Positions 898 through 55,752 of a DNA stretch of 64,000 bases are shown one piece after another; position 1 is the first letter of the stretch; each line of letters opens with the position of its first letter. The notes beneath the pieces were generated by a model. It did not search any database, was not told where the DNA came from, and was given only the letters and a program-made list of their open reading frames with translations. A program made the position numbers and the translations under genes. The stretch lies in contig NC_043006.1 in the NCBI RefSeq assembly GCF_006345805.1, positions 56,110,001-56,174,000 of the forward strand. The letters are read 5' to 3'. Origin of the DNA: Octopus sinensis. Its lineage: Eukaryota.

Positions 898-1019
898 TAC
901 CAAGTGGATCGCAAAATATTTGGAATTTCCAAAGAAGAATACTAACCACGTTCACCTCTGTTTTCTTTTCATTGATGGTGTATTGGAACTTTTTGCTACT
1001 TCAATTTATTATGATCTGA
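898..1019 (+). CDS. Terminal coding exon of an upstream cholinesterase-like paralog (copy A), GPI-signal-like C-terminus
   Basis: Acceptor ttttcag at 891-897; phase-1 reading (V)PSGSQNIWNFQRRILTTFTSVFFSLMVYWNFLLLQFIMI*; homologous to 23455-23558 and 50419-50507; AATAAA at 1053-1058. Confidence 0.75.
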
Positions 1020-1231: not shown

Positions 1232-1331
1232 NNNNNNNNNNNNNNNNNNNNNNNNNNNNNNNNNNNNNNNNNNNNNNNNNNNNNNNNNNNNNNNNNNNNN
1301 NNNNNNNNNNNNNNNNNNNNNNNNNNNNNNN
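1232..1331. other. Assembly gap (100 N)
   Basis: Run of N. Confidence 1.
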
Positions 1332-6529: not shown

Positions 6530-7760
6530 AATATCTTAGAAAGGTTTGGCCAGTATTGGCCCAGGCCATGTCTAACTTAATAGCACCACCTGGTGAAGTC
6601 TTTCAATTCAGGATTTGGGCACCAAGGCCCATTCGTGCAGAGAGTTATTGTTTGCGGAGACATATCCGGGTTTGCGTGGTTTGTCCGGGACTGTTTGAAG
6701 GAATTTGTCCAAAATCTTCTTAAATTTTGTTTGGTCAGTTTATGTTTTGACGTGTCTTGGTGTAATGTTGAAGAGGGCGATCCAATTGAGGTGAAATAAT
6801 TGTGCCGCAATGTTGTTATGAGATGCGATTGAGATTTTTGTTGTGGACGGATGACACGGGGTCCAAGTCTTGGATGTGTTTTGAAGATGATACCAACATC
6901 ATTTGGACAGTGCTGATGGAATATTTTCCACATCATACAGATAATGTAGCGTTCATGGCGTCGTTGGAGTGAATACAGTTTCAGCTTTTCCAGTCGATCC
7001 CAGTAGTCGTGGTCTGACATGGCATCTATCTTTTTCGTGATTGACCTTTGGGGAGCTTCAACTTTCATAATATTCCGTTTCGTATAGGGAGACCACAGTG
7101 GACAGCAGTATTCAAGGTGAGATCGGGCAAAAGTGGAGAAGAGAAGGATTATGGTGTGGGAATCTCTCGACTGGAAGGTTCTGAAAATCCAGGAACACAT
7201 TCTGCGGGCCATGTCAACTTTGCTGCTTATATGTGTAGCCCAGCTTATGTTGTAGTCCACAGTTACTCCCAAGTCTCTGATGTTGTTAGACGCTATGAGA
7301 GTTTCACCAGAAGGAAGGGCGTATGGGAGATTCAGAGCGTCCTCCCTTCCAAAGTGGATCAATTCGAATTTGTCTTCGTTTAGCAACATGTTGTTCTTTT
7401 CCGCCCATTGGACAACAGCCAGAAGGTCTGACTGAAGGTTTATCCGGTCATCCACGCCATTGATGACCTTCTGGAGCTTGGAATCACCAGCGAAGATTCT
7501 GATGTTACTGTGTTTGATGATGTCAGTGATGTCATTAATGTAGATGATGAAGAGAAGTGAGCCCAACACAGTGCCTTGTGGGACACCACTACTGACTTTG
7601 GCTGGGCTGGATTTGACTCCTTCGACTACAATATGTTGGGTTCTGTTATCAGGAAGCACTTAATCCACTGCAGTAGCTTTCCAGTGACACCAATATTGGA
7701 CAGCTTTCTCAAAAGGATCTTATGATCAACCCTGTCAAAGGCCTTGCTGAAATCAAGGTA
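6530..7760 (-). mobile_element. 5'-truncated CR1/L2-group LINE (RT 3' half)
   Basis: ORF 6577..7659: SGVPQGTVLGSLLF, IFAGDSK (degenerate FADD), RDLGV, LEYCCPLWSP, LKLYSLQRR; bounded by (TA)n on both sides. Confidence 0.9.
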
Positions 7761-14206: not shown

Positions 14207-15918
14207 GTATTTATATTTTTACATACTTTTCGATTTGTCTGGGGCATTCTTTCTCTGTACACACGCACATATTCGAACATACACGCGCGCTCTCGTACAT
14301 ATATACGTATATATATACGTATTTGTATCTGTATACATAAAATCTCCGTCGTTTAAGGCTGATCATGGTACTGTAGAATGTTGTCTATAAATACAAGTCG
14401 CCTCTCTCCCTCACATTGATGTTAACACAAAAGAAGCCCAGCTATCTTGGGACGGAAGAATTTTGTTGGAGATGTTAGAATACAAGTTATGATAACGAAA
14501 GTCCAAGATTTCTGCCATTTCTATTCTTGCCATTCCTTACATATCAAAAGGAACATCCCATAGAGCTTGCCATGATGTATCTGTATTATTGTGATTGACC
14601 CAGAATACGACAAATGCGACTCAATGTAGTAAAGGTAGATGAAATGCTGCTCAGCATTTCACCCGGCGTGCTAACGATTCTACTTGTTCATCGGCCTCGT
14701 ATTCATTATATATTTATCTATTATATTCACCTAAAAGAATATTGAAATTCAATAGTCACCATATATCGTACTTAATGTTAGTGTAACGTAGAATAGAAAT
14801 TTACAGCGTTAGTTGTCATAGGTAACATATATAATGGATGTGTTGTGTATAAAATCACAATATATGTAATGAAAGGAGATGAAACTTGTTTCAGCAGTGG
14901 TTAGTAAGAACACCAGATGCATTTCAGCCTCATTGAACCATATCAATGATGTGTACATACAGACAGTAACATGCTTAGACAATGCTTGTCGCCTCCGATA
15001 TGAAGAAAATGGTGCATAAATGTTCACTTGTACTTCGATTAGTTGCCCGCCGGAATGATAACCCATTATATGCAATAGAAATAATATTAAATCAAAATAA
15101 CCCTCTATGTATCATACATAATATAAATATAGAGTTGAAGGGAAAATAACAGCGCTATTCTTCCCACAAATAGTATGTATTATATATGTGTTGTGTTTGA
15201 AACACAATGTATATCGTAAAGAGACAAAAATCATATGTGCAGTGTGTAGCAAGTACGCCAGATTCGGGCGCCTATACTTATGCTAACGAATATTTATTGC
15301 TTGTTTCCAGTATATCATGTGCACAAATCTCGTCTGCGTATTTGACAGTCAGTGAGCAAAGGCCACTAAGGCCGATACGTACGCATGTATGCATGTATGT
15401 AAGCATGCATGCGATTACGTATGGATGTAGGCTTTTACGGCCTCTCTCTATTTATTAAGTGACTGTTTTTACCGGTTCGAACCAATTTATAGTTAGGCAT
15501 CATCGCACAACATACTGAGGCACATTATATTTGATTACACCGTCAGAGGCCACGTTCACAATGGGCAATCGTGTGAACCATATAGTTATTGTTCTTCTGC
15601 GTCACTTGTGGTGATCGCCAACTTCTCGCTCATATCTATGATTGGTAGTAATGCATTAACACGCAAAGGCAAACACGCACACACACATACACTCATACAC
15701 ACACATATACTCACACATACACAAAAGGTAAATAAATAAATAGATGTAACTTTACACAGCAAAACATATTATATGTTCTACTATGATATATTGTGGCATT
15801 AGAAGATAAGAGAAAATTAATTAAATTATTTTGCCTCTAGACTCATTCAAATATGTTCTTTCAATAATATTCTTTTTCTTTCTTTCAGAATTCCGCCAAC
15901 ATTTTACCCATTCGTATC

Positions 15919-17408
15919 ATGGAAGGTCTGAAATATATTTTAATAATTTCTCTATTAAAAACTCTTGTCCATGCAGAAGACCCGATAATTGAAACTACCA
16001 GCGGAAAGATTAATGGATCAACAGTTGTAGTTCAGAATGTTGAGCTTGATGTATTTCTTGGAATACCATTTGCGAAACCTCCTGTTGGTAATCTAAGATT
16101 TAGAAGACCTGAAAAAATTGAACGGTGGAGTGGTATAAAAGAAACGAAGGAACATGTTGCGGCGTGTGCACAACATGTTAGTGATATGTTTGATGACATT
16201 CCAGGTGCAGATCTGTGGAAAATAAAAGCTGATATAAAAGAAGACTGTCTTTATTTAAACATTTGGACGCCAACAGAAGCGCGGAAGTCCCGTTCAAACT
16301 TAACTACGATGATTTGGATATATGGAGGTGGATTTACATCTGGATCAAGCACGATGGACATGTATGATGGAAGATGGTTAGCTGCCAGTCAAAATATTAT
16401 TGTTGCATCATTGAATTACAGAGTAGGGCCCTTTGGTTTCCTTTCCTTAAATGACGAGCGCGCTCCAGGTAATATGGGACTGCTTGATCAAAACCTCGCT
16501 ATAAAGTGGATTCGCGATAATATTGCATCATTCGGCGGAGACCCTGATAAACTGACACTATTTGGAGAAAGTGCTGGTGCAGTATCTGTTAGTATGCATG
16601 TTATTTCACCAATGTCTCGGAATCTTTTCAGGAATGCTATTATAATGAGTGGGACATATAACGCTGACTGGGCAATTAGCTCAAAAGAGGGAAATAAGGA
16701 TAGAGCGAAAGAAATGGCTGCTTTCCTGAAATGCCCAACTGAGAGTGATAAGCAGATGCTAGATTGTTTTCTAAATGCCGATGCCAAAAATATATCACTG
16801 GGACAATTTCATAATTTAAACGGCTTCTTCAGTTTTCCTTTTTTCCCCATTATCGATAACTATTTCTTACAGGCGAAGCCAAACAAAGCTCTACAAAATA
16901 AAGCAATTAAAAAAGATGTATTAATAGGTTTTGTTAAAAATGAAGGCAGCCTTTTTCTTCTAACGAGTTTCCCCCAATATTTCCCCTTTCAGGGAACTGT
17001 TCCAATAAACAATTCTATCTCACATAAATTAATGAAAGAAGTGATTGAACCATTACAACTAAATCCTACGCAGCTTGATTCCATCTTTTATGTTTATGGG
17101 TCTAATATCTACTCCTCCTCTGAAACTGAAAAATACAGATACGTACTTGACCAAGTAGCTGGTGATACCATGTTTAAATGTCCTACTATTGAATTTTCCC
17201 GGGAATGGAGTAACCATTCCAATGTTTACATGTATTCTTTTGATTATCGATCAAATGTTTCGCCCCGGCCGGAATGGATCGGTTCCCCACACGGAAGTGA
17301 TATATACTATGTGTTTTCGCGAGCGTTATATACAACGAATTCTTCATCAGAAGATAAGGAAGTATCAGAATTGATGTCAAGTTACTTTGCAAACTTTTCT
17401 AAATCAGG
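15919..17408 (+). CDS. Acetylcholinesterase-like carboxylesterase copy B, main coding exon
   Basis: Signal peptide MEGLKYILIISLLKTLVHA; FLGIPFAKPP; EDCLYLNIW; oxyanion hole WIYGGGF; GESAG; catalytic Glu (KNEG) and His (PHGSD); donor tcagg|gtaag. Confidence 0.95.
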
Positions 17409-19394: not shown

Positions 19395-19579
19395 TAATCC
19401 TAATAATGGTGACTGTGTTGACTGCTCCAATGAACCATGGTCGAAATTCACACAACAAAGCCAGAAATATTTTGCGATTGACAAGAAACCAACGATGAAG
19501 AATAAGGACACGTCTATGTACAGTGTATGCGATTTTTGGTCAGATCTTCTCCCTAAATTAAAAGAACCTTCTAGTCCAG
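19395..19579 (+). CDS. Esterase copy B, second coding exon
   Basis: tctctag|t acceptor completes Gly; GNPNNGDCVDCSNEPWSKF..KYFAID..VCDFWSDLLPKL; 185 bp like the copy D exon; donor ccag|gtaac. Confidence 0.92.
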
Positions 19580-23454: not shown

Positions 23455-23558
23455 TACCAAGTGGATCACAGAATATTTGGACTTTTCAAGGAAGAATACT
23501 AACCACTTTCAGTTCCATTTTCTTCTCTTTGGTGTTGTTCTGGAACATTTTGTGTTGA
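23455..23558 (+). CDS. Esterase copy B, terminal exon encoding a GPI-signal-like tail
   Basis: tttttcag|ta phase 1 joins the upstream exon; (V)PSGSQNIWTFQGRILTTFSSIFFSLVLFWNILC*; total CDS 1779 nt = 592 aa; AATAAA at 23631-23636. Confidence 0.8.
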
Positions 23559-24439: not shown

Positions 24440-25323
<884 letters not shown>

Positions 25324-26343
25324 TAACTGACTCTATTTGGACAAAGTGCTGGTGCAATATCTATAAGCATGCATGTTATTTCACCAATGTCTCGGAAACT
25401 TTTCAGTAATGCTATTATAATGAGTGGGACATTCAACTCTGGCTTGGCAATTAAGTCAAAAAAGGTAAATATTGACAGAGCCAAAGAAATGGCTGCTTTC
25501 CTGAAATGTCCAACTGAGAACGATGAGCATATGTTAAATTGCTTTCTAAAAGCCGATGCTAAATATATGACAAAAGGACAAATTCATAATTCAAAGGAAT
25601 TCATACAAATTCCTTTTTCTCCTATTGTTGATAACTATTTCTTACAGAAGCCAAACGAAATTCTGCAAAAAGAAACAATTAAAAAAGATGTGCTAATAGG
25701 TTTTGTTAAAAATGAAAGCAGTCTTTTTCTTCTTGATTTCCCCAAATATTTCACCGTTAACGGAACCGTTCCAATAAACTATTGTATTGCACATAAATTT
25801 ATGAAAAATCTTATTGAACCAGTACAATTAAATTCTGAGCAGCTTGATTCCATCTTTCATGTTTATGGTTCTCATGCCCATTTCTCTTCTGAAACTGAAA
25901 AATACAGATACGTACTAAGCCAAGTAGCTGGCGATACCTTGTTTAAATGTCCTGCTATTAATTTCTCCCGAGTATTGAGTACCCATTCCAATGTTTACAT
26001 GTATTCTTTTGAGTATCGATCAAATTTTACACCCTGGCCGGAATGGATGGGTGTATTACACGGCAATGATATATTCTATGTGTTTTCGCACGCGTTATCT
26101 GGAAAAAACTTTTCATTAGACGACAAATGAATGTCAAAAATGATGTCAAGTTATTTTGCAAACTTTTCCAAATCAGGGTAAGATTGATTTTATCGAACAT
26201 TTTGTTTTCTATTTTATTCTATCTCTAATAATCTCTATATATCAAGAATGCTTAGCATATCTGTTATCGTCGCATTTACAAAAATGCCATTGTTCATCCA
26301 ATCAAAAATGCACAGAAAAAGAAAACCTAAATAATAACCCACA

Positions 26344-26779: not shown

Positions 26780-28507
26780 CTGGTCCATCCGCGCCATCTT
26801 TCTATATGTGTCTTCCTAGCCATAGAAGTAATTGTGGGCGGTCTACCTCTTAAACATCTACTGGGGCAGAAACTACTAAGATTATGTTTATCTAAGTATT
26901 CATTATTACATGTCAGCCTAAGTAGGAGGCTCAGTTCTTCTGTGTTGACATTACGGAACTCCACCTGGATCTCATTGATCATCTCCACGTACTTCTCCAC
27001 CGCAAAATCTACGTCGATCGATGGGTATAGGGATACCACATCCATGCTACCCACCATACATCCTGTCAGGTCACAAGTGATGTTACAGTCATCGATCCTG
27101 CTGAGGAGATCTTCTGTGCTGTCACATACATCAGGTGACATCCGGATTATAGGGCGTATGATCATTGAGAGGAAGTAGGAGATTCTGAAATTGCTAGCGA
27201 TATTCGCTCCACAGACTGGTCTTGTTGGTGGTCCTGCTATAGGGTCAGTAATTACTTCATGGTCCTTGCGAAGTCCATACAGTGCCGGGATATCATTGTT
27301 CCAGGCTGGAAAGTATTTGCTGTACGTTTCTGGGGTCCCAGAACAATTGTCCACATCATCATGTGGGCGTTGAGGACCTTTTCTCTCTCCTCATGTGCCT
27401 GTACAGTTGTTATTTTTGTATTGGCTATATGAGGTTGCATTGCCTGGATGTAGTTCGGTAAGCTGCCTATTGACATCCTGCCTGACTTATCTGTGGGAAG
27501 GCATACCACCTCTCCGTTCCTCGTGCGCTGAATGAGCTTATGTAGGCCACATGCAGGCTTAATCCCGAGTTGTTGGGCCTCTGTCTTATTCTGTCTCTGT
27601 CTCTTAGTGTATAATCCTAAAATCTGTCTAAGTTTGGTCCTAGCTATAGTGAACTGTGCTTCCATATGGTGGAGTTCCATAATGTCAACACAGAAGAACT
27701 GAGCCTCTTACTCAGACTGACATGTAATAATGAATACTTAGATAAACATAATCTTAGTAGTTTCTGCCCCAGTAGATGTTTAAGAGGTAGACCGCCCACA
27801 ATTACTTCTATGGCTAGGAAGACACATATAGAAAGATGGCGCGGATGGACCAGAGCCATACGGAACCCCGCAAATGTCCATCAAATAAAGAAAATGATCG
27901 CACATGCACTAGGAGGTAGTATAAGAGTTACCCTAAAAGGCCACACGTTTAAGTTTAATAATAAAATATATGCCCAGGACGAGGGGGCAGCCATCGGCGT
28001 CAGTATCGCTGGTGATGTGGCCAACCTTTTCATGGTATGGTGGGACAGAAGTCTTAAAGAACGCCTAACACAGAACTCCATACTCGTAAACATGGACTCT
28101 CGCTATGTTGATGATATCAACATAGTGGTAAAGGCACCCCCACAAGAGAGTAATGTTGATATAGTAATAGAAACTAATACTATGGAGAGCATCCAGCAAA
28201 TAGCTAACTCCATCCACCAGAGCATTAAGGTCACAATAGACTACCCCACTAAACACCCCAACCATAGACTACAAGTACTAGACACTGAACTCTGGCTAGA
28301 AATTGTGAATAATAAAACCCAAATCCTTCATTCATACTATGCCAAACCTATGACCTCAAAATACTTGATCCACCGGAACTCAGCCATTGCGGACAATGCC
28401 AAATTCAATATTTTGATGGCAGACCTCGTCAGAATAATGAGAAATGTGTCACGCATGTGCGAGCCCACAGAGTTAAAGAGACACATACAATATTTCATTC
28501 ACCGCAT
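26780..28507. mobile_element. Penelope-like element RT with internal inversion (minus 26780-27665, plus 27669-28507)
   Basis: PALYGLRKDH, TRPVCG, GSMDVVSLYPSI on minus; AQDEGAAIG, RYVDDI, VLDTELW, YAKPM on plus; ~190 bp duplicated at the inversion. Confidence 0.9.
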
Positions 28508-28509
28508 TC

Positions 28510-28740
28510 ATCACACACACGTGACAATAACTGTTCGACAAATCTTCGCAAGTCAGCAATGCACAGGCACTGTACGAGAGCATGCGGAACGGTTTCATCG
28601 CTCCGCTTGCATCTCGGACAATCCCGACTGACTGCAGATCCGTGCCTGTAGGTCTTATCTCGAACCGGTAGCGCCCTCCGGTAGCAGTGCCAGGTCTGGG
28701 ATTTCTGGAAGTTATCCATCGTTCCTTGCATCAACTAAAG
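28510..28740 (-). mobile_element. L1/Tx1-like LINE C-terminal zinc-knuckle fragment
   Basis: WHCYRRALPVRDK..DCPRCKRSDETVPHALVQC (zf-RVT-like). Confidence 0.75.
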
Positions 28741-29403
28741 CAACATAAACCCCTCCCCAACCACACTCAGAACAGCAGATTTCTCCACTTCCCCAGCGTC
28801 GATGCGGCCACCCAAGAAAAACATGTAGAAGTGAGATCGAACTATAAAATCCTTCCCTTTAAATGATACTTTATGTTGCCGATAAAGAAAGAAAAACAGG
28901 AACAGTTAACCACGACAATATTTTAAACTCAGAATATAAAAGCCCTTAAACACTTACTGCTCGATAACTTGTCTGACGTTCTATTCTAATAACACATTTC
29001 CATTCATTGCATAAAATAGTACATTTTTTCTTTTCTCTAGTAATCCTAATAATGGAGATTGTTCAGGTTGCTCCAATGAACCATGGTCAAAGTTCACACC
29101 CCAAAACCAGAAATATTTTTTATTTGACAAGAAACTAAAAATGGAGAACAAGGAGACATCTATGTACAATGTATGCGGCTGTTGGAACGTTCTTGTCCAG
29201 GTAACTTTCCTGTTTTTTTTCAATAAGTTTATCTGTTGACCGTTATCATATATCCACGGGTCTATACACATACATGCATCTATCTATAAGTAATATTTGT
29301 AGCCATTTTAAAATGGCTGTCCGTTCGATCGAGTTCTGCTGCGATTTTTTACTCCCAAGAGGACATCTCTTCTAGCTGGTTAACGATGTACAGCTGCATC
29401 CAG

Positions 29404-34434: not shown

Positions 34435-36745
34435 GGCCCTTAAAGATCACGCAGCCACGTCCATCGAGGAGAGATGGCAGCTTATTCGCGACACCACTTG
34501 CAGAATAGCCATGTCATCCCTAGGAAAGAGGGAGCGGAGAAATCAAGACTGGTTTGAAGCTCACCTGCCTGAGATGGAGCCTGTCATTGCTGCCAAGAGG
34601 GAAGCACTGGTCAACTATAAGCGCGACCCATCAGAAAAAAACCTGGCTACTCTGAGAACAGCCAGAAGCGACGCCCAGAGGACGGCCAGACGTTGTGCCA
34701 ACATCTACTGGCAGAACTTATGCCAGAACATCCAGTGCTGTGCCGACAGTGGTAACGTGAAAGGGATGTACGAGGGGATGAAGAAAGCATTCGGGCCCAC
34801 TGTCAGCAAGGTTGCTCCACTGAAGTCCAGGGATGGCGAGGTCATCAAGGACCAAGCGAAGCAGATGGAGAGGTGGTCGAGCATTACCAGAACCTCTACT
34901 CCACTGAGAATGTGGTCAACAGGTCTGCCCTCGCCGGCATTCCTGCTCTGCCTGTCATGGAGGAGCTTGACCTGCCTCCAACAAAGGAAGAACTGAGCAA
35001 AGCAATTGACTCACTCGCTCGGGGCAAGGCAACAGAGCAAGACGTCATCCCCGTAGAAGTCATCCAGTGCGGGAAGCCAGCCCTTCTGGGCCATCTCCAC
35101 GAGCTGCTCTGTCAGTGCTGGGAGGAGGGCTCTGTCCCTAAAGATATGCGTGACGCAAACATCATCACACTGTATAAAAACAAAGGGGACAGAAGCGACT
35201 GTAATAATTACAGGGGCATATCACTGCTCAGCACTGTCGGTAAGGCATTTGCCAGGGTGGTCCTGAAGAGGTTGCAAATGCTTGAAGAGCGTGTGTACCC
35301 CGAGTCTCAGTCTGGCTTTAGGGCAGAGAGGTCTACAATCGACATGATCTTCTCACTCAGGCAGCTTCAAGAAAAGAGTCGAGAACAGAGAGAGCCCCTA
35401 TACGTGGCCTTCATCGACCTGGCTAAGGCGTTCGACGCAGTCAGCAGGGAGGGGCTGTTTGCGCTCCTGGGTAGGATAGGTTGCTCTCCCAGACTGCTGA
35501 AACTCATCACCTCCTTTCACGACGGTATGCAGGGAACAGTGCAGTTTGACGGATCGCCCTCGGAGTCGTTCACCATCCAGAGTGGAGTGAAACAGGGTTG
35601 CGTTCTGGCGCCGACGCTCTTCGGAATTTTCTTCTCCCTTGTCCTGTCCTATGCCTTCAGAACGTCCGACGATGGAGTGTTCCTCCACACCAGGGCTGAT
35701 GGTGGATTGTTCAATCTTGCGCGCTTCAGAGCTAAGACCAAAGTCCGTCAGGTGCTGATCAGAGAGATCCTCTTTGCTGACGATGCCGCCCTAACATCAC
35801 ACAACCAGCCGGGTCTCCAGAGGCTGGTCAGCTCCCTGGCGGATGCCTGCCAAGAGTTCGGCCTTACCATCGGCCTGAAAAAGACAGAGATCATGGGCCA
35901 GGACGTCGGAGGGGTCCCCAGCGTCAGTGTCGGCGACCACAGCTTGCAGGTGGTGAACGAGTTCACTTACCTGGGATCGAAAGTCTCCAGCAGCCTGTCC
36001 CTCGAGCCGGAGCCGAACAGACGGATTGGGAAGGCTGCTGCTGCCATGGCTAAGCTCTCCAGGAGAGTGTGGGAAAACAACATGCTCACAATAACCACCA
36101 AGATCGCAGTGTACCGAGCCTGCGTGCTGAGCACCCTACTCTACGGCAGCGAGAGCTGGACAACATACACCCGGCAAGAATGCCGCCTCAGCGGCTTCCA
36201 CATGCGGTGTCTTCGACGGATCCTTGGCATCTCCTGGAAGGACCGAGTACCAAACGGAGTCATCCTAGAACAGACTAATATGCCAAGCATGCATGCCCTC
36301 CTCGTGCGGAGACGACTGCGCTGACTCGGACACGTCTGCCTAAAGACATCCTGTACAGCGAACTTACCACAGGATCCCGACCCAAGGGACGTCCACAGCT
36401 ACGATACAGGGATGTGTGCAAGCGTGACCTGGGGACTGCCAACATCTGTGTGGACACGTGGGAGGTAACAGCTGCTGACCGCTCTGCCTGGCGTCGGACA
36501 GTGAGGAAAAGCGTTTCCATGGCTGAGGAAAGGAGAGCACAGCTGTGGTCGGACAGGCGGGACAGGAGGAGGACAACTGTAGCAACACCCCACACGTACC
36601 CATCGATGTCTGTGTGCAGCAACTGTACCAGGGACTGCCTCTCTAGAATTGGACTGTTCAGTCACAGCAGACGCTGCTCATCATCAAAATAGGCCCCACC
36701 CTTGGCGCGACCCATTGTCTATCAAGACAGACGGGAGAAGAGAAG
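34435..36745 (+). mobile_element. 5'-truncated RTE-clade LINE with largely intact RT ORF
   Basis: YKNKGDRSDCNNYRGISLL, QSGFRAERSTIDMIF, FIDLAKAFD, GVKQGCVLAPTLF, LFADD, LLYGSESW; one frameshift near 34880; inserted in (TA)n. Confidence 0.95.
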
Positions 36746-42172: not shown

Positions 42173-42738
42173 ATTGATCACATATTTATCAGTTATATGC
42201 AATATAAACATATTTGGATTAAAATAACCATAAATGTTCACTGATATTTCAGTTAGATTCCCGGCTGAATGAAATAAGTTATATGCAAAGATAAAAGTAT
42301 TGGATTAAAATAACAATCTATGTATCATACTCAATTTAAATACACCGTTGAAAGGCGACTTATTGTGACATTTCATCCTGATATAACATCTCTTCTAGAC
42401 GTGCTATATTTAAAAATACAATATATAACGTAAGGAAATGAAAATCATGCCAGTAGCGTCTAGCAAGGACGCCATATTCGGGCGGCAATTCGTAATACCG
42501 ATGAATGATTATTCATTATTTCCTGTTTATCATGCGCAAGAAATCTCGTTCACATATATGGTCGACTGCGAGTAAGTGTCCTTAAAAATGTCCATAGAAG
42601 CATGTATGTATGTATGTATGTATGTATGTACGTACGTATGTATGTATGTATGTATGTATGTATGTATGTATGTATGTATGTATGTATGTATGTATGTATG
42701 TATGTATGCATATATATATATATATATGTATATATATT

Positions 42739-42778
<40 letters not shown>

Positions 42779-42797
42779 AAGGGAGAGAGAGATATAC

Positions 42798-42831
<34 letters not shown>

Positions 42832-42944
42832 GCGTCATCGACTCCTCGCTAATATCCAGGATTAAAAGATATGTAAACACATAGAAGCAAACACACAATC
42901 ACACATAAAGATAAATACATAGACAGATAAAGAGATAGGTAGAT

Positions 42945-43160
<216 letters not shown>

Positions 43161-43278
43161 CTCAGATATATTGACTCAGATATAATGTCATTCGAAGACT
43201 CATTCAAAAACGTTATTTCAATATGTTTCTTTTGCTTTATTCTTTCAGAATTTCGTGAATAGTTGAGCCACTCATATC

Positions 43279-44756
43279 ATGGAAGAATTGAAGTATATTC
43301 TCATAATTTCTCTTTTTAAAATTTACGCTCATGCACAAGACCCTATAATTGATACTACCACTGGAAAAATTAATGGATCAACAATTTCAGTTCAGAATTT
43401 TGATCTTGATGTATTTCTTGGAATACCATTTGCTAAGCCTCCTGTTGGTAATCTAAGATTTAAAAGACCTGAAGAAATTGAACGGTGGAGTGGTATAAAA
43501 GAAACGAAGAAATATGCTTCATCATGTGAACAACCTATAACTGATAATTCTAATGATACTGCAGATGTAGATCTGTGGGAAAGTAATTTAAGTGAAGACT
43601 GTCTTTATTTAAATATTTGGGCGCCAACAGAAGCACGGAAGACCCGTTCAAATTTAACCACGATGATCTGGATATATGGAGGTGGATTTATTTCTGGATC
43701 AAGCGCGAAGGATGTGTTAGATGGGCGATGGTTAGCTGTTAGTCAAAATATTATCGTTGCATCAATAAATTACAGACTAGGGCCCTTTGGTTTCCTTTCT
43801 TTAAATGACGAGCGTGCTCCGGGTAATATGGGACTGCTTGATCAAAACCTTGCCATCAAGTGGATTCGCGATAATATTGCATCATTCGGCGGAGATCCTG
43901 ATAAACTGACACTATTTGGACAAAGTGCTGGTGCAATATCTGTTGGTATGCATGTTATTTCACCAAAGTCTCGAAATCTTTTCAGAAATGCTATTATGAT
44001 GAGTGGGACACCTAACACTAACAATGTATTTAAGACAAAAGAGGAAAATATTGATAGAGCGAAAGAAATGGCTGCTTTCCTGAAATGTCCAACTGAGAAC
44101 GATGAGCGTATGTTAAATTGCTTTCTAAAAGCCGATGCTAAAAATATAACAGTGGGACAATATCAAAATTTTAACGAATTGCGCGGAATTCCCTTTTCCC
44201 CCATTATAGATAACTATTTCTTACAGAAGAGTCCAAACGAAGTTCTGCAAAGTAAAACAATTAAAAAAGATGTGTTGATTGGATTTGTTAAAAACGAAGG
44301 AACTTTCATGCTTTTATTAACTAACCCGCAATATTTCACACCAAATGGAATTGCTCCGATAAACAAATCTATCGCACATAAATTAATGAAAAATTATTTG
44401 GGAGCAGAATTAAGTCCTGCGCAGCTTGATTCCATCTTTTATGTTTATGGTTCACATGTCTACACTTCTGAAACTGAAAAATACGCATACATATTAGACC
44501 AGGTACTTGGAGATATCATGTTTAAATGCCCTGGTATTAACTTTGCCCGGGTATTCAGTAACCATTCCAACCTTTATATGTATTCTTTTGAGTTTCTCTC
44601 AAATTCTGCGCCCTGGCCAGAAGGGAAGGGTGTAAGTCACTCGAACGATATTTATTACGTGTTTTCTCATGAAATATTTGCAAAAAATTATTCATCAGAA
44701 GACAAATACGTATCAGAAATGATGTCAAGTTATTTTGCAAACTTTTCTAAATCAGG
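43279..44756 (+). CDS. Acetylcholinesterase-like carboxylesterase copy D, main coding exon
   Basis: Signal peptide MEELKYILIISLFKIYAHA; EDCLYLNIW; WIYGGGF; GQSAG; KNEG; VSHSND; donor tcagg|gtaag. Confidence 0.95.
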
Positions 44757-44813
44757 GTAAGATTAATTTTTATCTGACATTTTGGTTCTTTGTTGGGCTT
44801 TTTCTATTCTCGC

Positions 44814-44868
<55 letters not shown>

Positions 44869-45141
44869 TACACACTCACACACACACACACACACGCACA
44901 CACACACATTCACACATATACATGGGTTCAAACTTGGATATGTGGTAAGATGTTTATTTTCCAGCCATAACGTTTTAGCCTCAGCTCTACTGCATAGCAC
45001 GTTTGGCAAGTCCCTTTTGCTATCAACCACGGGCCAGCCAAAGGGGTAATCGGGGAACCCCAGTGTCCGAGATTTTCCTGAGCACCAATAGCAAGTGCCC
45101 ACTCCAATTCCTTCTCTCCGACAATAATAATAATAATAATA

Positions 45142-45176
<35 letters not shown>

Positions 45177-45707
45177 TAATAAATGCCCTGATGCAGTACC
45201 AGGCAGTGGCTCTCATGGCTTCTGATCTTAACTGATTGGAAGTGTTATCATGTACATTGTTTTGTCTTGGTATAAAGAATGGGCTACAGCAAATATTCTG
45301 CTCAATACCACAGATTTGCTTGTCAGTTGTTTTACCGTAACCAGTTGAGCATGTCCCTTAGTGGCTGACGATATGTGCATCTCTGATCACGAGCAGAAGT
45401 AGTGGGGGAGCATCATAGCCATGTGTTGAGAGGGATTCTTTTTGGGGTTTGAATAGTTCACCTCTGGAAACATGGTGGTTCTTTCAACATCCTTAAACAA
45501 CCCTTATTCAGGGACCGTTTGAGCGGGATGGGCTACTCAACCTGAAGAAAATTCTAACTGGGCCCCACCTGCAAGGTCATGTGCTGTTTATCTTGATATG
45601 AGATCATCATGTCGCGCACATATGGTTGTGATGCATGTGCCTGGTATATTGGGCTTCGTATATTTTACCCCAGTGTCACTTTGATGGCATGAACTGCTCT
45701 CTCACTC

Positions 45708-48691: not shown

Positions 48692-48876
48692 TAATCCTAA
48701 TAATGGAGATTGTTCTGATTGCTCCAATGATCCATGGCCAAAGTTCACACTCGAAAACCAGAAATATCTTGTGATTGACAAGAAACCAAACATGAAGACC
48801 AGAGAGATTTCTACGTACAATTCATGCGACTTTTGGTCAGATCTTTTCCTTCGATTAAAGAAACGTACTTGTCCAG
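48692..48876 (+). CDS. Esterase copy D, second coding exon
   Basis: GNPNNGDCSDCSNDPWPKF..KYLVID..SCDFWSDLFLRLKKRTCP; 185 bp; canonical AG/GT. Confidence 0.92.
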
Positions 48877-50418: not shown

Positions 50419-50507
50419 TACCAAGTGGATCAAGGAATATTTGGACTTTCCAGGGAAGACTAATGACCTTTTTCACACCCATTCTCCTCTCTTTGATTTT
50501 GTTTTGA
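50419..50507 (+). CDS. Esterase copy D, terminal exon encoding a GPI-signal-like tail
   Basis: (V)PSGSRNIWTFQGRLMTFFTPILLSLILF*; total CDS 1752 nt = 583 aa; AATAAA at 50580-50585. Confidence 0.8.
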
Positions 50508-54812: not shown

Positions 54813-55752
54813 AGGGGTGGTGTCAACGAACATGACACTCAGAATAATGAGAAATGTTTCACGCATGTGCGAGCCTACAGAATTAAAGAGACACATACAG
54901 TATTTCATTCACCGCATGCAGTTCTCAGGTTACAGCCATAAAGAAAGGATCAGAGTATACAAAGGAGCCATGAAGAAATTTGATAATATATTATGTAATG
55001 ATAGGAATGGGATTTGCCCACTCTATAGGAACAAGTCATGGAACACTATAGAAAGGACAAAAAAGAAAATAGGGAAGGCCAACTCTTGGTATGATAGCCA
55101 TAAATACCAGAGTGTCATGTTCGTTGACACCACCCCTGGAGGTGAACTGGCGTACCGCTTTAGAAGGACCCTAGATAAACTTAAACTAAGAATTAAGGTT
55201 GTTGAAAAGCCAGGCAACCCTATCAAATCTATAATTGGTAGAACCTATCATTTTAGTAGAACCCCCTGTACGGATAAGTATTGCACTATATGTAGATTTA
55301 GCCCACAAACAAACTGTAAAGCCAGAAATGTAGTCTATAGTATAAGATGTATAGAGGAACGATGCAGTAACAAGACAATAACATACGTAGGGGAAACGGC
55401 AAGAAGCATAGGAGAGCGGGTGAATGACATTGGAGACAACTCAAGGAAGGTAAAAGCTCATCGATTCTGTACCAACACGCCGAACAGGAACACGGGGGAT
55501 CAATCAATAACATAGAGATTAAGATATTGTCCACACATAGAACAGATGCAACAATTAGACAAATTACAGAAGCTACACATATAATAGAAAATAAATCTAG
55601 CCTGAATAGAAAACTAGAATGGAGCAATAGCACACACCACAACATATGACGATAGAGGATCCCGAAAACATAATAAATACACAGATAAATAACAAATAGA
55701 AATGAATAACTATATATATATGTATATATATCTATGTATATATGTATGTATA

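What the first reader, a model, noticed from the sequence alone, without database searches (positions are those of the whole stretch)
43279..44756. Paralog divergence is concentrated in the active-site gorge while the catalytic triad is kept
Manual alignment to Torpedo AChE numbering (from memory). Both B and D keep S200, E327, H440, W84 and the GGG oxyanion hole. Peripheral-site residues are altered in both (Y70 H/P, D72 S/T, Y121 T/I, W279 F/Y, Y334 lost). B keeps E199, Y130, W233 and acyl-pocket F288/F290 but has W432R. D has E199Q (GQSAG), Y130L, loss of W233, acyl pocket changed to about R/I, G441S, and a 2-aa shorter omega loop. Scaffold stretches are nearly identical. Inference: substrate diversification, with D probably not a classical AChE.
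Basis: partly seen in the sequence, partly recalled or inferred. Interest (0 to 1): 0.7.

Follow-up and report, generated by a model that had tools for sequence, protein, structure and literature searches.

The report
Octopus cholinesterase-like paralogs with diverging gorges
The window holds part of a tandem cluster of octopus-specific cholinesterase-derived esterase genes that keep the catalytic machinery while the residues lining the substrate gorge change faster than silent sites, a known kind of enzyme-family diversification seen here in genes that are annotated but unstudied.

Summary
The window is Octopus sinensis: gene B and gene D are 100% identical to the RefSeq proteins 'cholinesterase 2' and 'cholinesterase 2-like'. 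43279-44756 is only the first coding exon of D, which has three.

Twelve of the 14 canonical gorge-aromatic positions differ between B and D, against 28% of other positions (p=2e-5) and 42% of their immediate neighbours (p=0.004). Gorge dN is about 2.5 times the gene-wide dS, both for B vs D and for D vs its O. bimaculoides ortholog (p about 0.003-0.004). The triad, oxyanion hole, W84 and three disulfides are kept.

- D is not the octopus AChE, but neither is B. The whole octopod paralog clade lost D72 and Y334 and has E443D. The true AChE orthogroup is separate.
- B's F288/F290 are not retained. The O. vulgaris B-like copies have Leu at both positions, so O. sinensis B gained F288, F290 and F293 and acquired W432R within dS about 0.02.
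- Copy C is a truncated pseudogene.

The best explanation is adaptive substrate-pocket diversification in a fast-evolving family (omega 0.5-1). The hydrophobic C-termini suggest GPI anchoring. No biochemistry or expression data were available. It is a new member of a known kind.

The parts
898..1019 (+). Gene A: one alternative last coding exon (hydrophobic tail). The rest of the gene lies upstream of the window.
   Evidence: tblastn hit. Its translation VPSGSQNIWNFQRRILTTFTSVFFSLMVYWNFLLLQFIMI* equals the C-terminus of O. sinensis 'cholinesterase 2-like' isoform X1 (P0135) and of isoform X4 (P0133).
15919..17408 (+). Gene B, coding exon 1 (aa 1-497). It holds the signal peptide, the GESAG serine, and the triad S218/E342/H458. 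Its acceptor at 15888 implies an upstream 5'UTR exon.
   Evidence: ORF, GT donor, PF00135 E=3e-151. The spliced protein is 100% identical to XP_036362593.1.
16828..16845 (+). B acyl-pocket loop, F304-S-F306-P-F-F309 (Torpedo 288-293).
   Evidence: Both O. vulgaris B-like copies have Leu at positions 304, 306 and 309. The differences are three single-base changes.
17266..17268 (+). B codon R450 (Torpedo W432R).
   Evidence: Codon CGG here. It is Trp in both O. vulgaris B-like copies and in 99% of 93 other cholinesterases.
19395..19579 (+). Gene B, coding exon 2.
   Evidence: tblastn hit, AG/GT boundaries, and the reading frame joins exon 1.
23455..23558 (+). Gene B, last exon: a hydrophobic, GPI-signal-like tail plus the stop codon.
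25204..26177 (+). Copy C, a pseudogene remnant of exon 1. It is 5'-truncated at about residue 168, has two in-frame stops, and carries GQSAG.
29041..29200 (+). Copy C, pseudogene exon 2 with an internal deletion. No exon 3 was found.
43279..44756 (+). Gene D, coding exon 1 (aa 1-493), which is the finding's interval. Triad S216/E340/H454, oxyanion G134-136 and A217, W100 (= W84). Its acceptor at 43248 implies an upstream 5'UTR exon.
   Evidence: The spliced protein is 100% identical to XP_029641705.1.
43921..43923 (+). D codon Q215 (Torpedo E199Q, motif GQSAG).
   Evidence: Codon CAA, against GAA in B. Q is also present in C, in gene A and in the P0004/P0005 lineage.
44182..44190 (+). D acyl-pocket positions R302-G-I304 (Torpedo 288-290).
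44614..44649 (+). D segment around the catalytic His: W446 P E G449 K G V S H454 S455 N456 D457. This gives W435G, G441S, Y442N and E443D in Torpedo numbering.
48692..48876 (+). Gene D, coding exon 2.
50419..50507 (+). Gene D, last exon: a Cys-containing linker followed by a hydrophobic, GPI-signal-like tail plus the stop codon.

Best explanation
The interval is exon 1 of one member (D) of an octopod-specific tandem cluster of genes that descend from cholinesterase. In the window the order is A, B, pseudogene C, D, all on the + strand.

Shown:
- The proteins are secreted-type alpha/beta-hydrolases.
- They keep everything needed for serine-esterase chemistry: the Ser-Glu-His triad, the GGG+Ala oxyanion hole, three disulfides and Trp84.
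- The side chains that shape the substrate gorge are being replaced. These are the peripheral site, the omega loop, the acyl pocket and the residues flanking the catalytic His.
- Replacement at the 14 canonical gorge positions runs at or above the silent-site rate.

Inferred:
- The paralogs are active esterases whose substrate pockets are diversifying under positive selection, analogous to AChE versus BChE but more extreme.
- D has only 5 of 14 gorge aromatics, has Gln for Glu199, and has lost Trp233 and Tyr130. It most likely has a wide, more aliphatic pocket, poor acetylcholine turnover, and a preference for other esters, possibly bulkier choline esters since Trp84 stays.
- The hydrophobic C-terminal exon suggests the proteins are GPI-anchored.
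- Synaptic acetylcholine hydrolysis is left to a separate, conservative AChE gene.
For: - Family and fold: PF00135 E=1e-145. The best PDB sequence matches are BChE and Torpedo AChE, E about 1e-112 to 1e-115. The AF2 model has pLDDT 87 and TM about 0.93 to BChE/AChE.
- Catalytic residues and disulfides are kept.
- Gorge enrichment: 12/14 vs 28% of other positions, p=1.9e-5, and p=0.004 against flanking residues.
- Gorge dN over gene dS is 2.5 for B-D (p=0.003 against omega=1) and 2.8 for D vs its O. bimaculoides ortholog (p=0.004). With local dS the tests still give p=0.002 and p=0.02.
- Independent replicate: O. sinensis B vs the two O. vulgaris B-like copies differ at 3/14 and 5/14 gorge positions, against about 4% overall (p=0.025 and p=1e-4). 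This includes three Leu-to-Phe changes within six acyl-loop codons.
- Family-wide, Fitch steps are 4.2 at gorge positions vs 2.2 elsewhere (p=0.001). Positions 288, 290, 334, 70 and 72 are among the most changeable in the protein.
- The genes are maintained. D is intact in O. sinensis and O. vulgaris, and all recoverable sequence (residue 106 onward) is open in O. bimaculoides. Non-gorge dN/dS is about 0.55. The unconstrained copy C has accumulated stops and truncations.
- The true AChE orthogroup keeps 11/14 aromatics plus D72, E199 and E443, with 0/14 gorge changes between species.
Against: - No enzymatic, expression or protein data were available, so activity and substrates are inferred.
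- The dN/dS tests rest on 14-17 codons, a counting method (Nei-Gojobori) and a binomial approximation.
- dS is mosaic along the genes, from 0.05 to more than 1, and gene conversion is evident. This can distort site-class tests.
- Whole-gene omega is high (0.5-0.6, and about 1 for B between sister species), so much of the change could be relaxed constraint.
- In the P0004/P0005 lineage the gorge is not accelerated (ratio 0.65).
- D has lost residues that are invariant in 93 other cholinesterases (W435G, plus E443D shared by the clade), which could mean impaired catalysis.
- The list of 14 positions is taken from memory. Papers read here confirm parts of it only.
- The B acyl-loop changes rest on a single assembly.
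Confidence: 0.6

Rival explanations
1. Relaxed constraint only. After duplication the copies were freed from hydrolysing acetylcholine at diffusion-limited rates. The aromatic gorge lining is no longer needed and drifts, while the core fold and triad stay under weak purifying selection for some generic esterase or scavenger role. No new specificity is being selected.
For: Whole-gene omega is 0.42-0.61 among paralogs and orthologs, and about 1.06 for B between O. sinensis and O. vulgaris. Positions conserved in at least 90% of other cholinesterases are lost across the whole clade. The P0004/P0005 lineage shows a gorge dN/dS of only 0.65.
Against: Drift predicts gorge dN about equal to dS, not 2.5-2.8 times dS in two independent comparisons. 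It does not predict three parallel Leu-to-Phe changes in a six-codon acyl loop within dS about 0.02. Gorge positions change about twice as often as their immediate neighbours in the same loops.
Confidence: 0.25
2. A non-hydrolytic or stoichiometric role. The proteins act as cell-surface binding or adhesion molecules, or as bioscavengers that bind rather than turn over ligands, as cholinesterase-like adhesion molecules and some low-activity insect AChE1 proteins do.
For: The putative GPI-type membrane tail places the protein on the cell surface. D has lost residues that support efficient catalysis: E199Q, E443D, W435G and G441S.
Against: The nucleophile Ser, acid Glu, His and all oxyanion-hole residues are retained in every intact paralog examined. 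Known non-catalytic family members have lost the Ser. The divergence is focused on the substrate gorge rather than on the outer surface.
Confidence: 0.08
3. B and/or D are young pseudogenes or assembly or annotation artefacts, and the pattern is decay or error.
For: The neighbouring copy C is a pseudogene. B evolves at omega about 1 between sister species. Gene models in related assemblies are chimeric or fused, as in P0002 and P0131.
Against: Both have full-length open frames with canonical splice sites and match RefSeq proteins exactly. D is intact in two species and open over all recoverable sequence in a third, at dS 0.136, where a neutral sequence would be expected to carry several stops. 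Decay would not spare the triad, the oxyanion hole and the six cysteines while hitting 12 of 14 gorge positions.
Confidence: 0.07

Closest known systems
Vertebrate butyrylcholinesterase relative to acetylcholinesterase
   Same: It is a paralog of AChE with an identical fold, triad, oxyanion hole and W84. Six of the 14 gorge aromatics are replaced by aliphatic residues, and F288/F290 become Leu/Val, which widens the substrate range (review PMC8071298, read). BChE is also the best structural and sequence match of D.
   Different: BChE keeps E199, D72, Y130, W233, Y334, W432, G441, Y442 and E443. D has lost all of these except W432, and B has lost D72, Y334, W432, Y442 and E443. The octopod copies arose independently, lie in a tandem cluster, and are still changing between sister species.
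Octopus AChE proper (O. vulgaris A0A075D677, P0007; O. bimaculoides P0006; Argonauta P0008)
   Same: It comes from the same ancestral gene. The octopod-specific NGDCxDC insertion is shared, and the C-terminal tail is similarly hydrophobic.
   Different: It is a separate orthogroup, 59-61% identical to B and D against 89% between AChE orthologs. It keeps 11/14 gorge aromatics plus D72, E199 and E443, with no gorge changes between species.
Multi-copy invertebrate cholinesterases (amphioxus ChE1/ChE2, nematode ace-1 to ace-4, tick AChEs, Schistosoma mansoni ChE paralogs, PMC6919630)
   Same: These are lineage-specific duplications of a cholinesterase gene whose copies differ in the acyl pocket and peripheral site, with proposed non-synaptic or detoxifying roles. 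Apart from the title and abstract of PMC6919630 listed, this comparison comes from my own knowledge.
   Different: The octopod cluster has not been biochemically characterised. No paper on it was found in the searchable library. Loss of E199, W233 and Y130 with the triad retained is, to my knowledge, unusual among proteins still grouped with cholinesterases.
Insect juvenile-hormone esterases and the JHE duplicate used as an odorant-degrading enzyme (PMC5626784)
   Same: They share the GQSAG nucleophile motif with D, C and A. They also give a precedent for a duplicated type-B carboxylesterase being recruited to degrade environmental or odorant esters.
   Different: This is motif-level convergence only. 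D's nearest relatives by sequence and fold are cholinesterases, not arthropod JHEs.

Membership tests
Type-B carboxylesterase / alpha-beta hydrolase (Pfam PF00135) | Significant full-length match to the family profile | tested here: met
   B scores 505 bits (E=3e-151) and D scores 486 bits (E=1.6e-145), against a cutoff of 27.
Type-B carboxylesterase / alpha-beta hydrolase (Pfam PF00135) | Ser-Glu-His triad and oxyanion hole (G118, G119, A201) | tested here: met
   D has S216/E340/H454 and G134-136/A217. B has S218/E342/H458 and G136-138/A219.
Cholinesterase subfamily (AChE/BChE clade) | Closest relatives by sequence and fold are cholinesterases; three conserved disulfides; choline-binding Trp84 | tested here: met
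   The top PDB hits are BChE and Torpedo AChE. Foldseek gives TM about 0.93. The genes nest within molluscan cholinesterases in the NJ tree. C67-C94, C254-C265, C402-C521 and W84 are present.
Classical acetylcholinesterase | FGESAG with Glu199 | tested here: not met
   D has Gln (CAA, 43921-43923). B has Glu, which parsimony on the tree suggests is a reversal.
Classical acetylcholinesterase | Aromatic gorge lining (about 10-14 of the 14 positions) and peripheral anionic site (Y70, D72, Y121, W279, Y334) | tested here: not met
   D is aromatic at 5/14 positions and B at 8/14. D72 and Y334 are lost in both genes and in the whole paralog clade.
Classical acetylcholinesterase | Narrow acyl pocket F288/F290 | tested here: not met
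   D has R/I. B has F/F, but the O. vulgaris B-like copies have L/L, so this is a recent gain rather than inheritance.
Classical acetylcholinesterase | Orthology to the species' AChE gene | tested here: not met
   Identity to P0007 is 59-61%, against 89% between octopus AChE orthologs, and the clades are separate.
Classical acetylcholinesterase | Preference for acetyl(thio)choline, substrate inhibition, sensitivity to AChE-selective inhibitors | not testable with these tools
   This needs recombinant enzyme assays.
Non-catalytic cholinesterase-like adhesion molecules (neuroligin, gliotactin, etc.) | Loss of the nucleophile Ser or of the triad | tested here: not met
   The triad is intact in A, B and D, so they are not filed here.
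Arthropod juvenile-hormone esterase | GQSAG motif together with membership of the arthropod JHE clade | tested here: not met
   The motif is present in D, but its nearest relatives are cholinesterases.
GPI-anchored (H-type) cholinesterase subunit | C-terminal signal: small omega-site residues, a short spacer, and a 15-20 aa hydrophobic tail encoded by a separate last exon | tested here: inconclusive
   D ends ...CPVPSGSRNIWTFQGRLMTFFTPILLSLILF, encoded by its own exon, and the model predicts a terminal helix. No GPI predictor or experiment was available.

The most novel reading that the evidence does not exclude
Octopods carry a private, rapidly evolving cluster of surface-anchored esterases derived from cholinesterase. 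Their substrate gorges are under recurrent positive selection, including a re-invention of the vertebrate-type Phe288/Phe290 acyl pocket in O. sinensis B within dS about 0.02. The selection would be driven by ecological ligands, for example degradation of prey-derived choline esters or of contact chemosensory cues at the suckers, rather than by neurotransmission.
Probability: 0.3. Interest if true: 0.6.

Novelty: new member of a known kind. Interest (0 to 1): 0.4.

Why it matters
Cholinesterases are a textbook case of how gorge-lining residues set substrate specificity. A natural, young series of paralogs and species variants keeps the catalytic core and swaps exactly those residues: Leu/Phe at 288/290, Trp/Arg at 432, Glu/Gln at 199, and loss of Trp233. 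This gives a ready-made mutational series for studying how specificity evolves.

For cephalopod biology it flags an unstudied, lineage-specific enzyme family. Esterase activity in octopus tissues might be misattributed to AChE, which is used as a biomarker, if these paralogs contribute to it.

Tried and rejected
- Literature: searches for octopus or cephalopod cholinesterase paralogs, gene-family expansion, sucker or salivary-gland esterases found no paper on this cluster.
- Ortholog DNA: exact-protein look-ups failed for P0013, P0003 and P0007, so no codon data were obtained for the AChE orthogroup or for gene A.
- O. bimaculoides locus: it is full of assembly gaps and its gene model P0002 is a chimera of two copies. 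Only residues 106-583 of the D ortholog could be used. Positions 70-86 listed for 'Obim_P0002' belong to another copy and were disregarded.
- Structure: the prediction tool returns confidence and secondary structure but no coordinates. A distance-based gorge mapping could not be done, and the literature list of 14 positions was used instead.
- Codon models: no PAML or HyPhy was available, so Nei-Gojobori counting with global and local dS was used.
- Species assignment: I first took the window for O. vulgaris with allelic differences. This was rejected when the cluster-member look-up showed exact identity to O. sinensis proteins.
- Missing 5' part of C: nothing was found upstream. Homology stops abruptly at about 25204.

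Full report
**What is at the coordinates.**
The window is AT-rich, repeat-rich animal DNA. The interval 43279-44760 is one 493-codon open frame that matches the type-B carboxylesterase family end to end (PF00135, E=1.6e-145). Its best matches among solved structures are butyrylcholinesterase and Torpedo acetylcholinesterase (E about 1e-112 to 1e-115).

It is not a whole gene. A GT donor follows codon 493. A 185-bp exon at 48692-48876 continues the frame, and a last exon at 50419-50507 adds a hydrophobic tail. This gives a 583-aa protein, D.

The same three-exon structure is found for B (15919-17408, 19395-19579, 23455-23558; 592 aa). Copy C (25204-26177 and 29041-29200) is a pseudogene. It lacks the first ~168 codons, has two in-frame stops and a deletion in exon 2, and has no last exon. 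Of copy A only an alternative last exon lies in the window (898-1019).

**Origin.**
D is 99% identical to an O. vulgaris protein. It is exactly identical to XP_029641705.1 'cholinesterase 2-like' of Octopus sinensis, and B is exactly identical to XP_036362593.1 'cholinesterase 2' of the same species. A's exon equals the C-terminus of O. sinensis 'cholinesterase 2-like' isoforms X1 and X4, a gene annotated with eight C-terminal isoforms. The window is therefore O. sinensis, and the genes are already annotated automatically.

In the O. vulgaris chromosome OX597822.1 the relatives lie between 56.24 and 56.60 Mb. They include two further paralog lineages, P0016 (GHSAG) and P0004 (GQSAG).

**Checking the observation.**
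I rebuilt Torpedo numbering from the tool's own alignment to PDB 1dx6 and verified it at 23 landmark residues. I then aligned Torpedo AChE, B, C, D, 16 octopod relatives and 7 outgroups.
- Both genes keep S200, E327, H440, W84 and G117-119.
- Peripheral-site positions, written B/D: Y70 H/P, D72 S/T, Y121 T/I, W279 F/Y, Y334 T/L.
- B has E199, Y130, W233, F288, F290 and W432R.
- D has E199Q, Y130L, W233N, F288R, F290I, G441S and an omega loop two residues shorter.

The six disulfide cysteines are also kept.

The claimed concentration of divergence holds up.
- 12 of the 14 canonical gorge-aromatic positions differ between B and D, against 146 of 514 other aligned positions (p=1.9e-5).
- Against residues within two positions of them the figure is 12/14 vs 19/45 (p=0.004), so this is not only a 'loops vary more' effect.
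- In controls the gorge is as conserved as the rest or more so: octopus AChE orthologs 0/14, Torpedo AChE vs primate BChE 6/14 vs 46%.
- An unbiased scan of the 131 columns that are at least 90% conserved in 93 non-octopod cholinesterases shows where B and D depart. The departures cluster in the omega loop (72-91), at 127-130, 199, 233 and 334, and around the catalytic His (428-451).

**Rates.**
- Whole-gene dN/dS is 0.52 for B-D, 0.61 for D vs its O. bimaculoides ortholog, and 0.47 for the P0004/P0005 pair. That is fast for an enzyme but below 1.
- At the 14 gorge codons dN is 0.85 for B-D against a gene-wide dS of 0.34 (ratio 2.5; p=0.003 against omega=1). For D vs its ortholog it is 0.38 against 0.136 (ratio 2.8; p=0.004).
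- Using the dS of the surrounding 51 codons instead of the gene-wide value, on the 14 positions plus 72, 199 and 441, still gives p=0.002 and p=0.02.
- The P0004/P0005 lineage shows no such excess (ratio 0.65).
- Over 17 octopod paralog sequences, parsimony steps per site average 4.2 at gorge positions against 2.2 elsewhere (p=0.001). Positions 288, 290, 334, 70 and 72 are among the most changeable in the protein.
- The scaffold is truly constrained. B codons 173-212 have dN=0 at dS 0.3-0.4.
- Part of the near-identity is gene conversion. dS ranges from 0.05 to more than 1 along B-D, copy C switches nearest relative along its length, and B codons 41-80 are 97.5% identical at the DNA level to the distant paralog P0004.

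First, neither B nor D is the octopus AChE. The real AChE orthogroup consists of O. vulgaris P0007, O. bimaculoides P0006 and Argonauta P0008. It is 59-62% identical to B and D, while its own orthologs are 89% identical. It keeps 11/14 aromatics, D72, E199 and E443. All non-AChE paralogs, B included, have lost D72 and Y334 and carry E443D.

Second, B's 'AChE-like' acyl pocket is new, not retained.
- Two O. vulgaris copies were compared: the positional ortholog of B (second half of the fused model P0131) and an extra inverted copy (P0130). Both read Leu at 288, 290 and 293 and Trp at 432.
- O. sinensis B differs from them by three single-base Leu-to-Phe changes within six codons, and by W432R. 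Overall dS is only 0.02-0.03 and whole-gene omega is 1.06 and 0.68.
- Gorge positions are again over-represented among these differences: 3/14 and 5/14 against about 4% overall (p=0.025 and 1e-4).

Third, Gln199 is shared by A, C, D and the P0004 lineage. On the tree, B's Glu is most simply read as a reversal. This last point is an inference.

**Structure.**
An AlphaFold2 model of the O. vulgaris allele of D, built with 52 aligned relatives, is confident (mean pLDDT 87, pTM 0.87). It superposes on BChE and Torpedo AChE with TM about 0.93. Confidence dips in the omega loop, in the acyl loop and near the segment before the catalytic His, which are the divergent parts. Coordinates are not returned, so gorge geometry could not be measured.

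**Explanation.**
What is shown:
- a tandem, octopod-specific cluster derived from cholinesterase;
- catalytic machinery retained;
- gorge lining replaced at or above the silent rate in the D and B lineages;
- long-term maintenance of open frames next to a decayed copy.

What is inferred:
- the proteins are active, probably GPI-anchored ecto-esterases whose pockets are being tuned to substrates other than acetylcholine;
- D is the most derived, with a wide, aliphatic pocket, a weakened Glu199/Tyr130/Glu443 network, and Trp84 retained.

The main rival is simple relaxation after release from the synaptic role. It explains the high overall omega, but not dN above dS at the gorge or the triple Leu-to-Phe change. 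A binding-only role and pseudogenisation are less likely because the triad, the oxyanion hole and the cysteines are spared.

**Comparison and novelty.**
The mechanism is the same as for AChE versus BChE, where 6 of 14 aromatics are replaced and F288/F290 become Leu/Val (PMC8071298). It also resembles other lineage-specific cholinesterase duplications such as those of Schistosoma (PMC6919630). The GQSAG motif is shared with insect juvenile-hormone esterases, but only as convergence.

The genes are in RefSeq. I found no paper on the cluster. I rate it a new member of a known kind, with moderate interest. The most notable element is the very recent, gorge-focused change between sister species.

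**Limits.**
- There are no activity or expression data.
- The site sets are small and the dN/dS method is a counting one.
- Recombination among copies can distort the tests.
- The O. bimaculoides locus is gapped.
- The 14-position list comes from memory. It was corroborated for F288/F290 and the '6 of 14' statement and for most positions (which lists F292 rather than F288). Swapping 288 for 292 changes 12/14 to 11/14.

Noticed in passing
window 25204-26177 and 29041-29200: Copy C is a 5'-truncated pseudogene with two in-frame stops, a deletion in exon 2 and no last exon. Its nearest relative switches between B and D along its length, which suggests gene conversion or unequal crossing-over in the array.
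   Followed up: partly
window 898-1019: This is an alternative last exon of the upstream gene A, O. sinensis 'cholinesterase 2-like', which is annotated with eight C-terminal isoforms. A has Phe in place of the choline-binding Trp84, and GQSAG.
   Followed up: partly
window 16828-16845 and 17266-17268; L007 56568-71875; L006 12450-20490: O. sinensis B differs from both O. vulgaris B-like copies by three Leu-to-Phe changes in six acyl-loop codons and by W432R, at dS 0.02-0.03. Whole-gene omega is about 1.06 and 0.68.
   Followed up: yes
L006 and L007 (O. vulgaris OX597822.1, 56.37-56.48 Mb) compared with window 15919-50507: O. vulgaris carries an extra, inverted B-like copy (P0130) between D and the B ortholog, which lie about 150 kb apart there. 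In the O. sinensis window B and D are about 20 kb apart on the same strand. This is either a structural difference or a collapsed assembly.
   Followed up: partly
L001 (O. bimaculoides) and L007 (O. vulgaris): Public gene models are faulty. P0002 splices exons of two copies across assembly gaps, with an exon 2 inserted in the omega loop. P0131 fuses the A ortholog and the B ortholog into a 1189-aa protein. P0013 skips about 140 codons of exon 1.
   Followed up: yes
window 16039-16158 (B codons 41-80) compared with L003: This stretch of B is 97.5% identical at the DNA level to the distant paralog P0004, where overall dS is 0.5. dS along B-D ranges from 0.05 to more than 1. Both are signs of inter-paralog gene conversion.
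   Followed up: partly
window 19404-19430 and 48701-48727 (start of exon 2): All octopod cholinesterase-type proteins, the true AChE included, share an insertion NGDCxDC with two extra cysteines that Torpedo and other outgroups lack.
   Followed up: no
window 6577-7659 (-), 27666-28631 (+), 34873-36324 (+): These are reverse-transcriptase ORFs (RVT_1) of retrotransposons. One lies inside the intron of pseudogene C. A 232-aa ORF at 54817-55515 has no Pfam match and shares the motif RIMRNVSRMCEPTELKRHIQYFIHR with the ORF at 27666-28631.
   Followed up: partly
window 1232-1331, and many sites such as 42530-43207 and 44770-45216: There is a 100-base run of N (an assembly gap). Microsatellites are abundant (TATC, CA, TA and TACA type) and flank the genes, including directly upstream and downstream of D exon 1.
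   Followed up: no
window 44641-44643: Torpedo position 441, next to the catalytic His, is Ser in O. sinensis D, Thr in O. vulgaris D, and Gly in nearly all other cholinesterases. It is one of only five amino-acid differences between the two D orthologs.
   Followed up: partly
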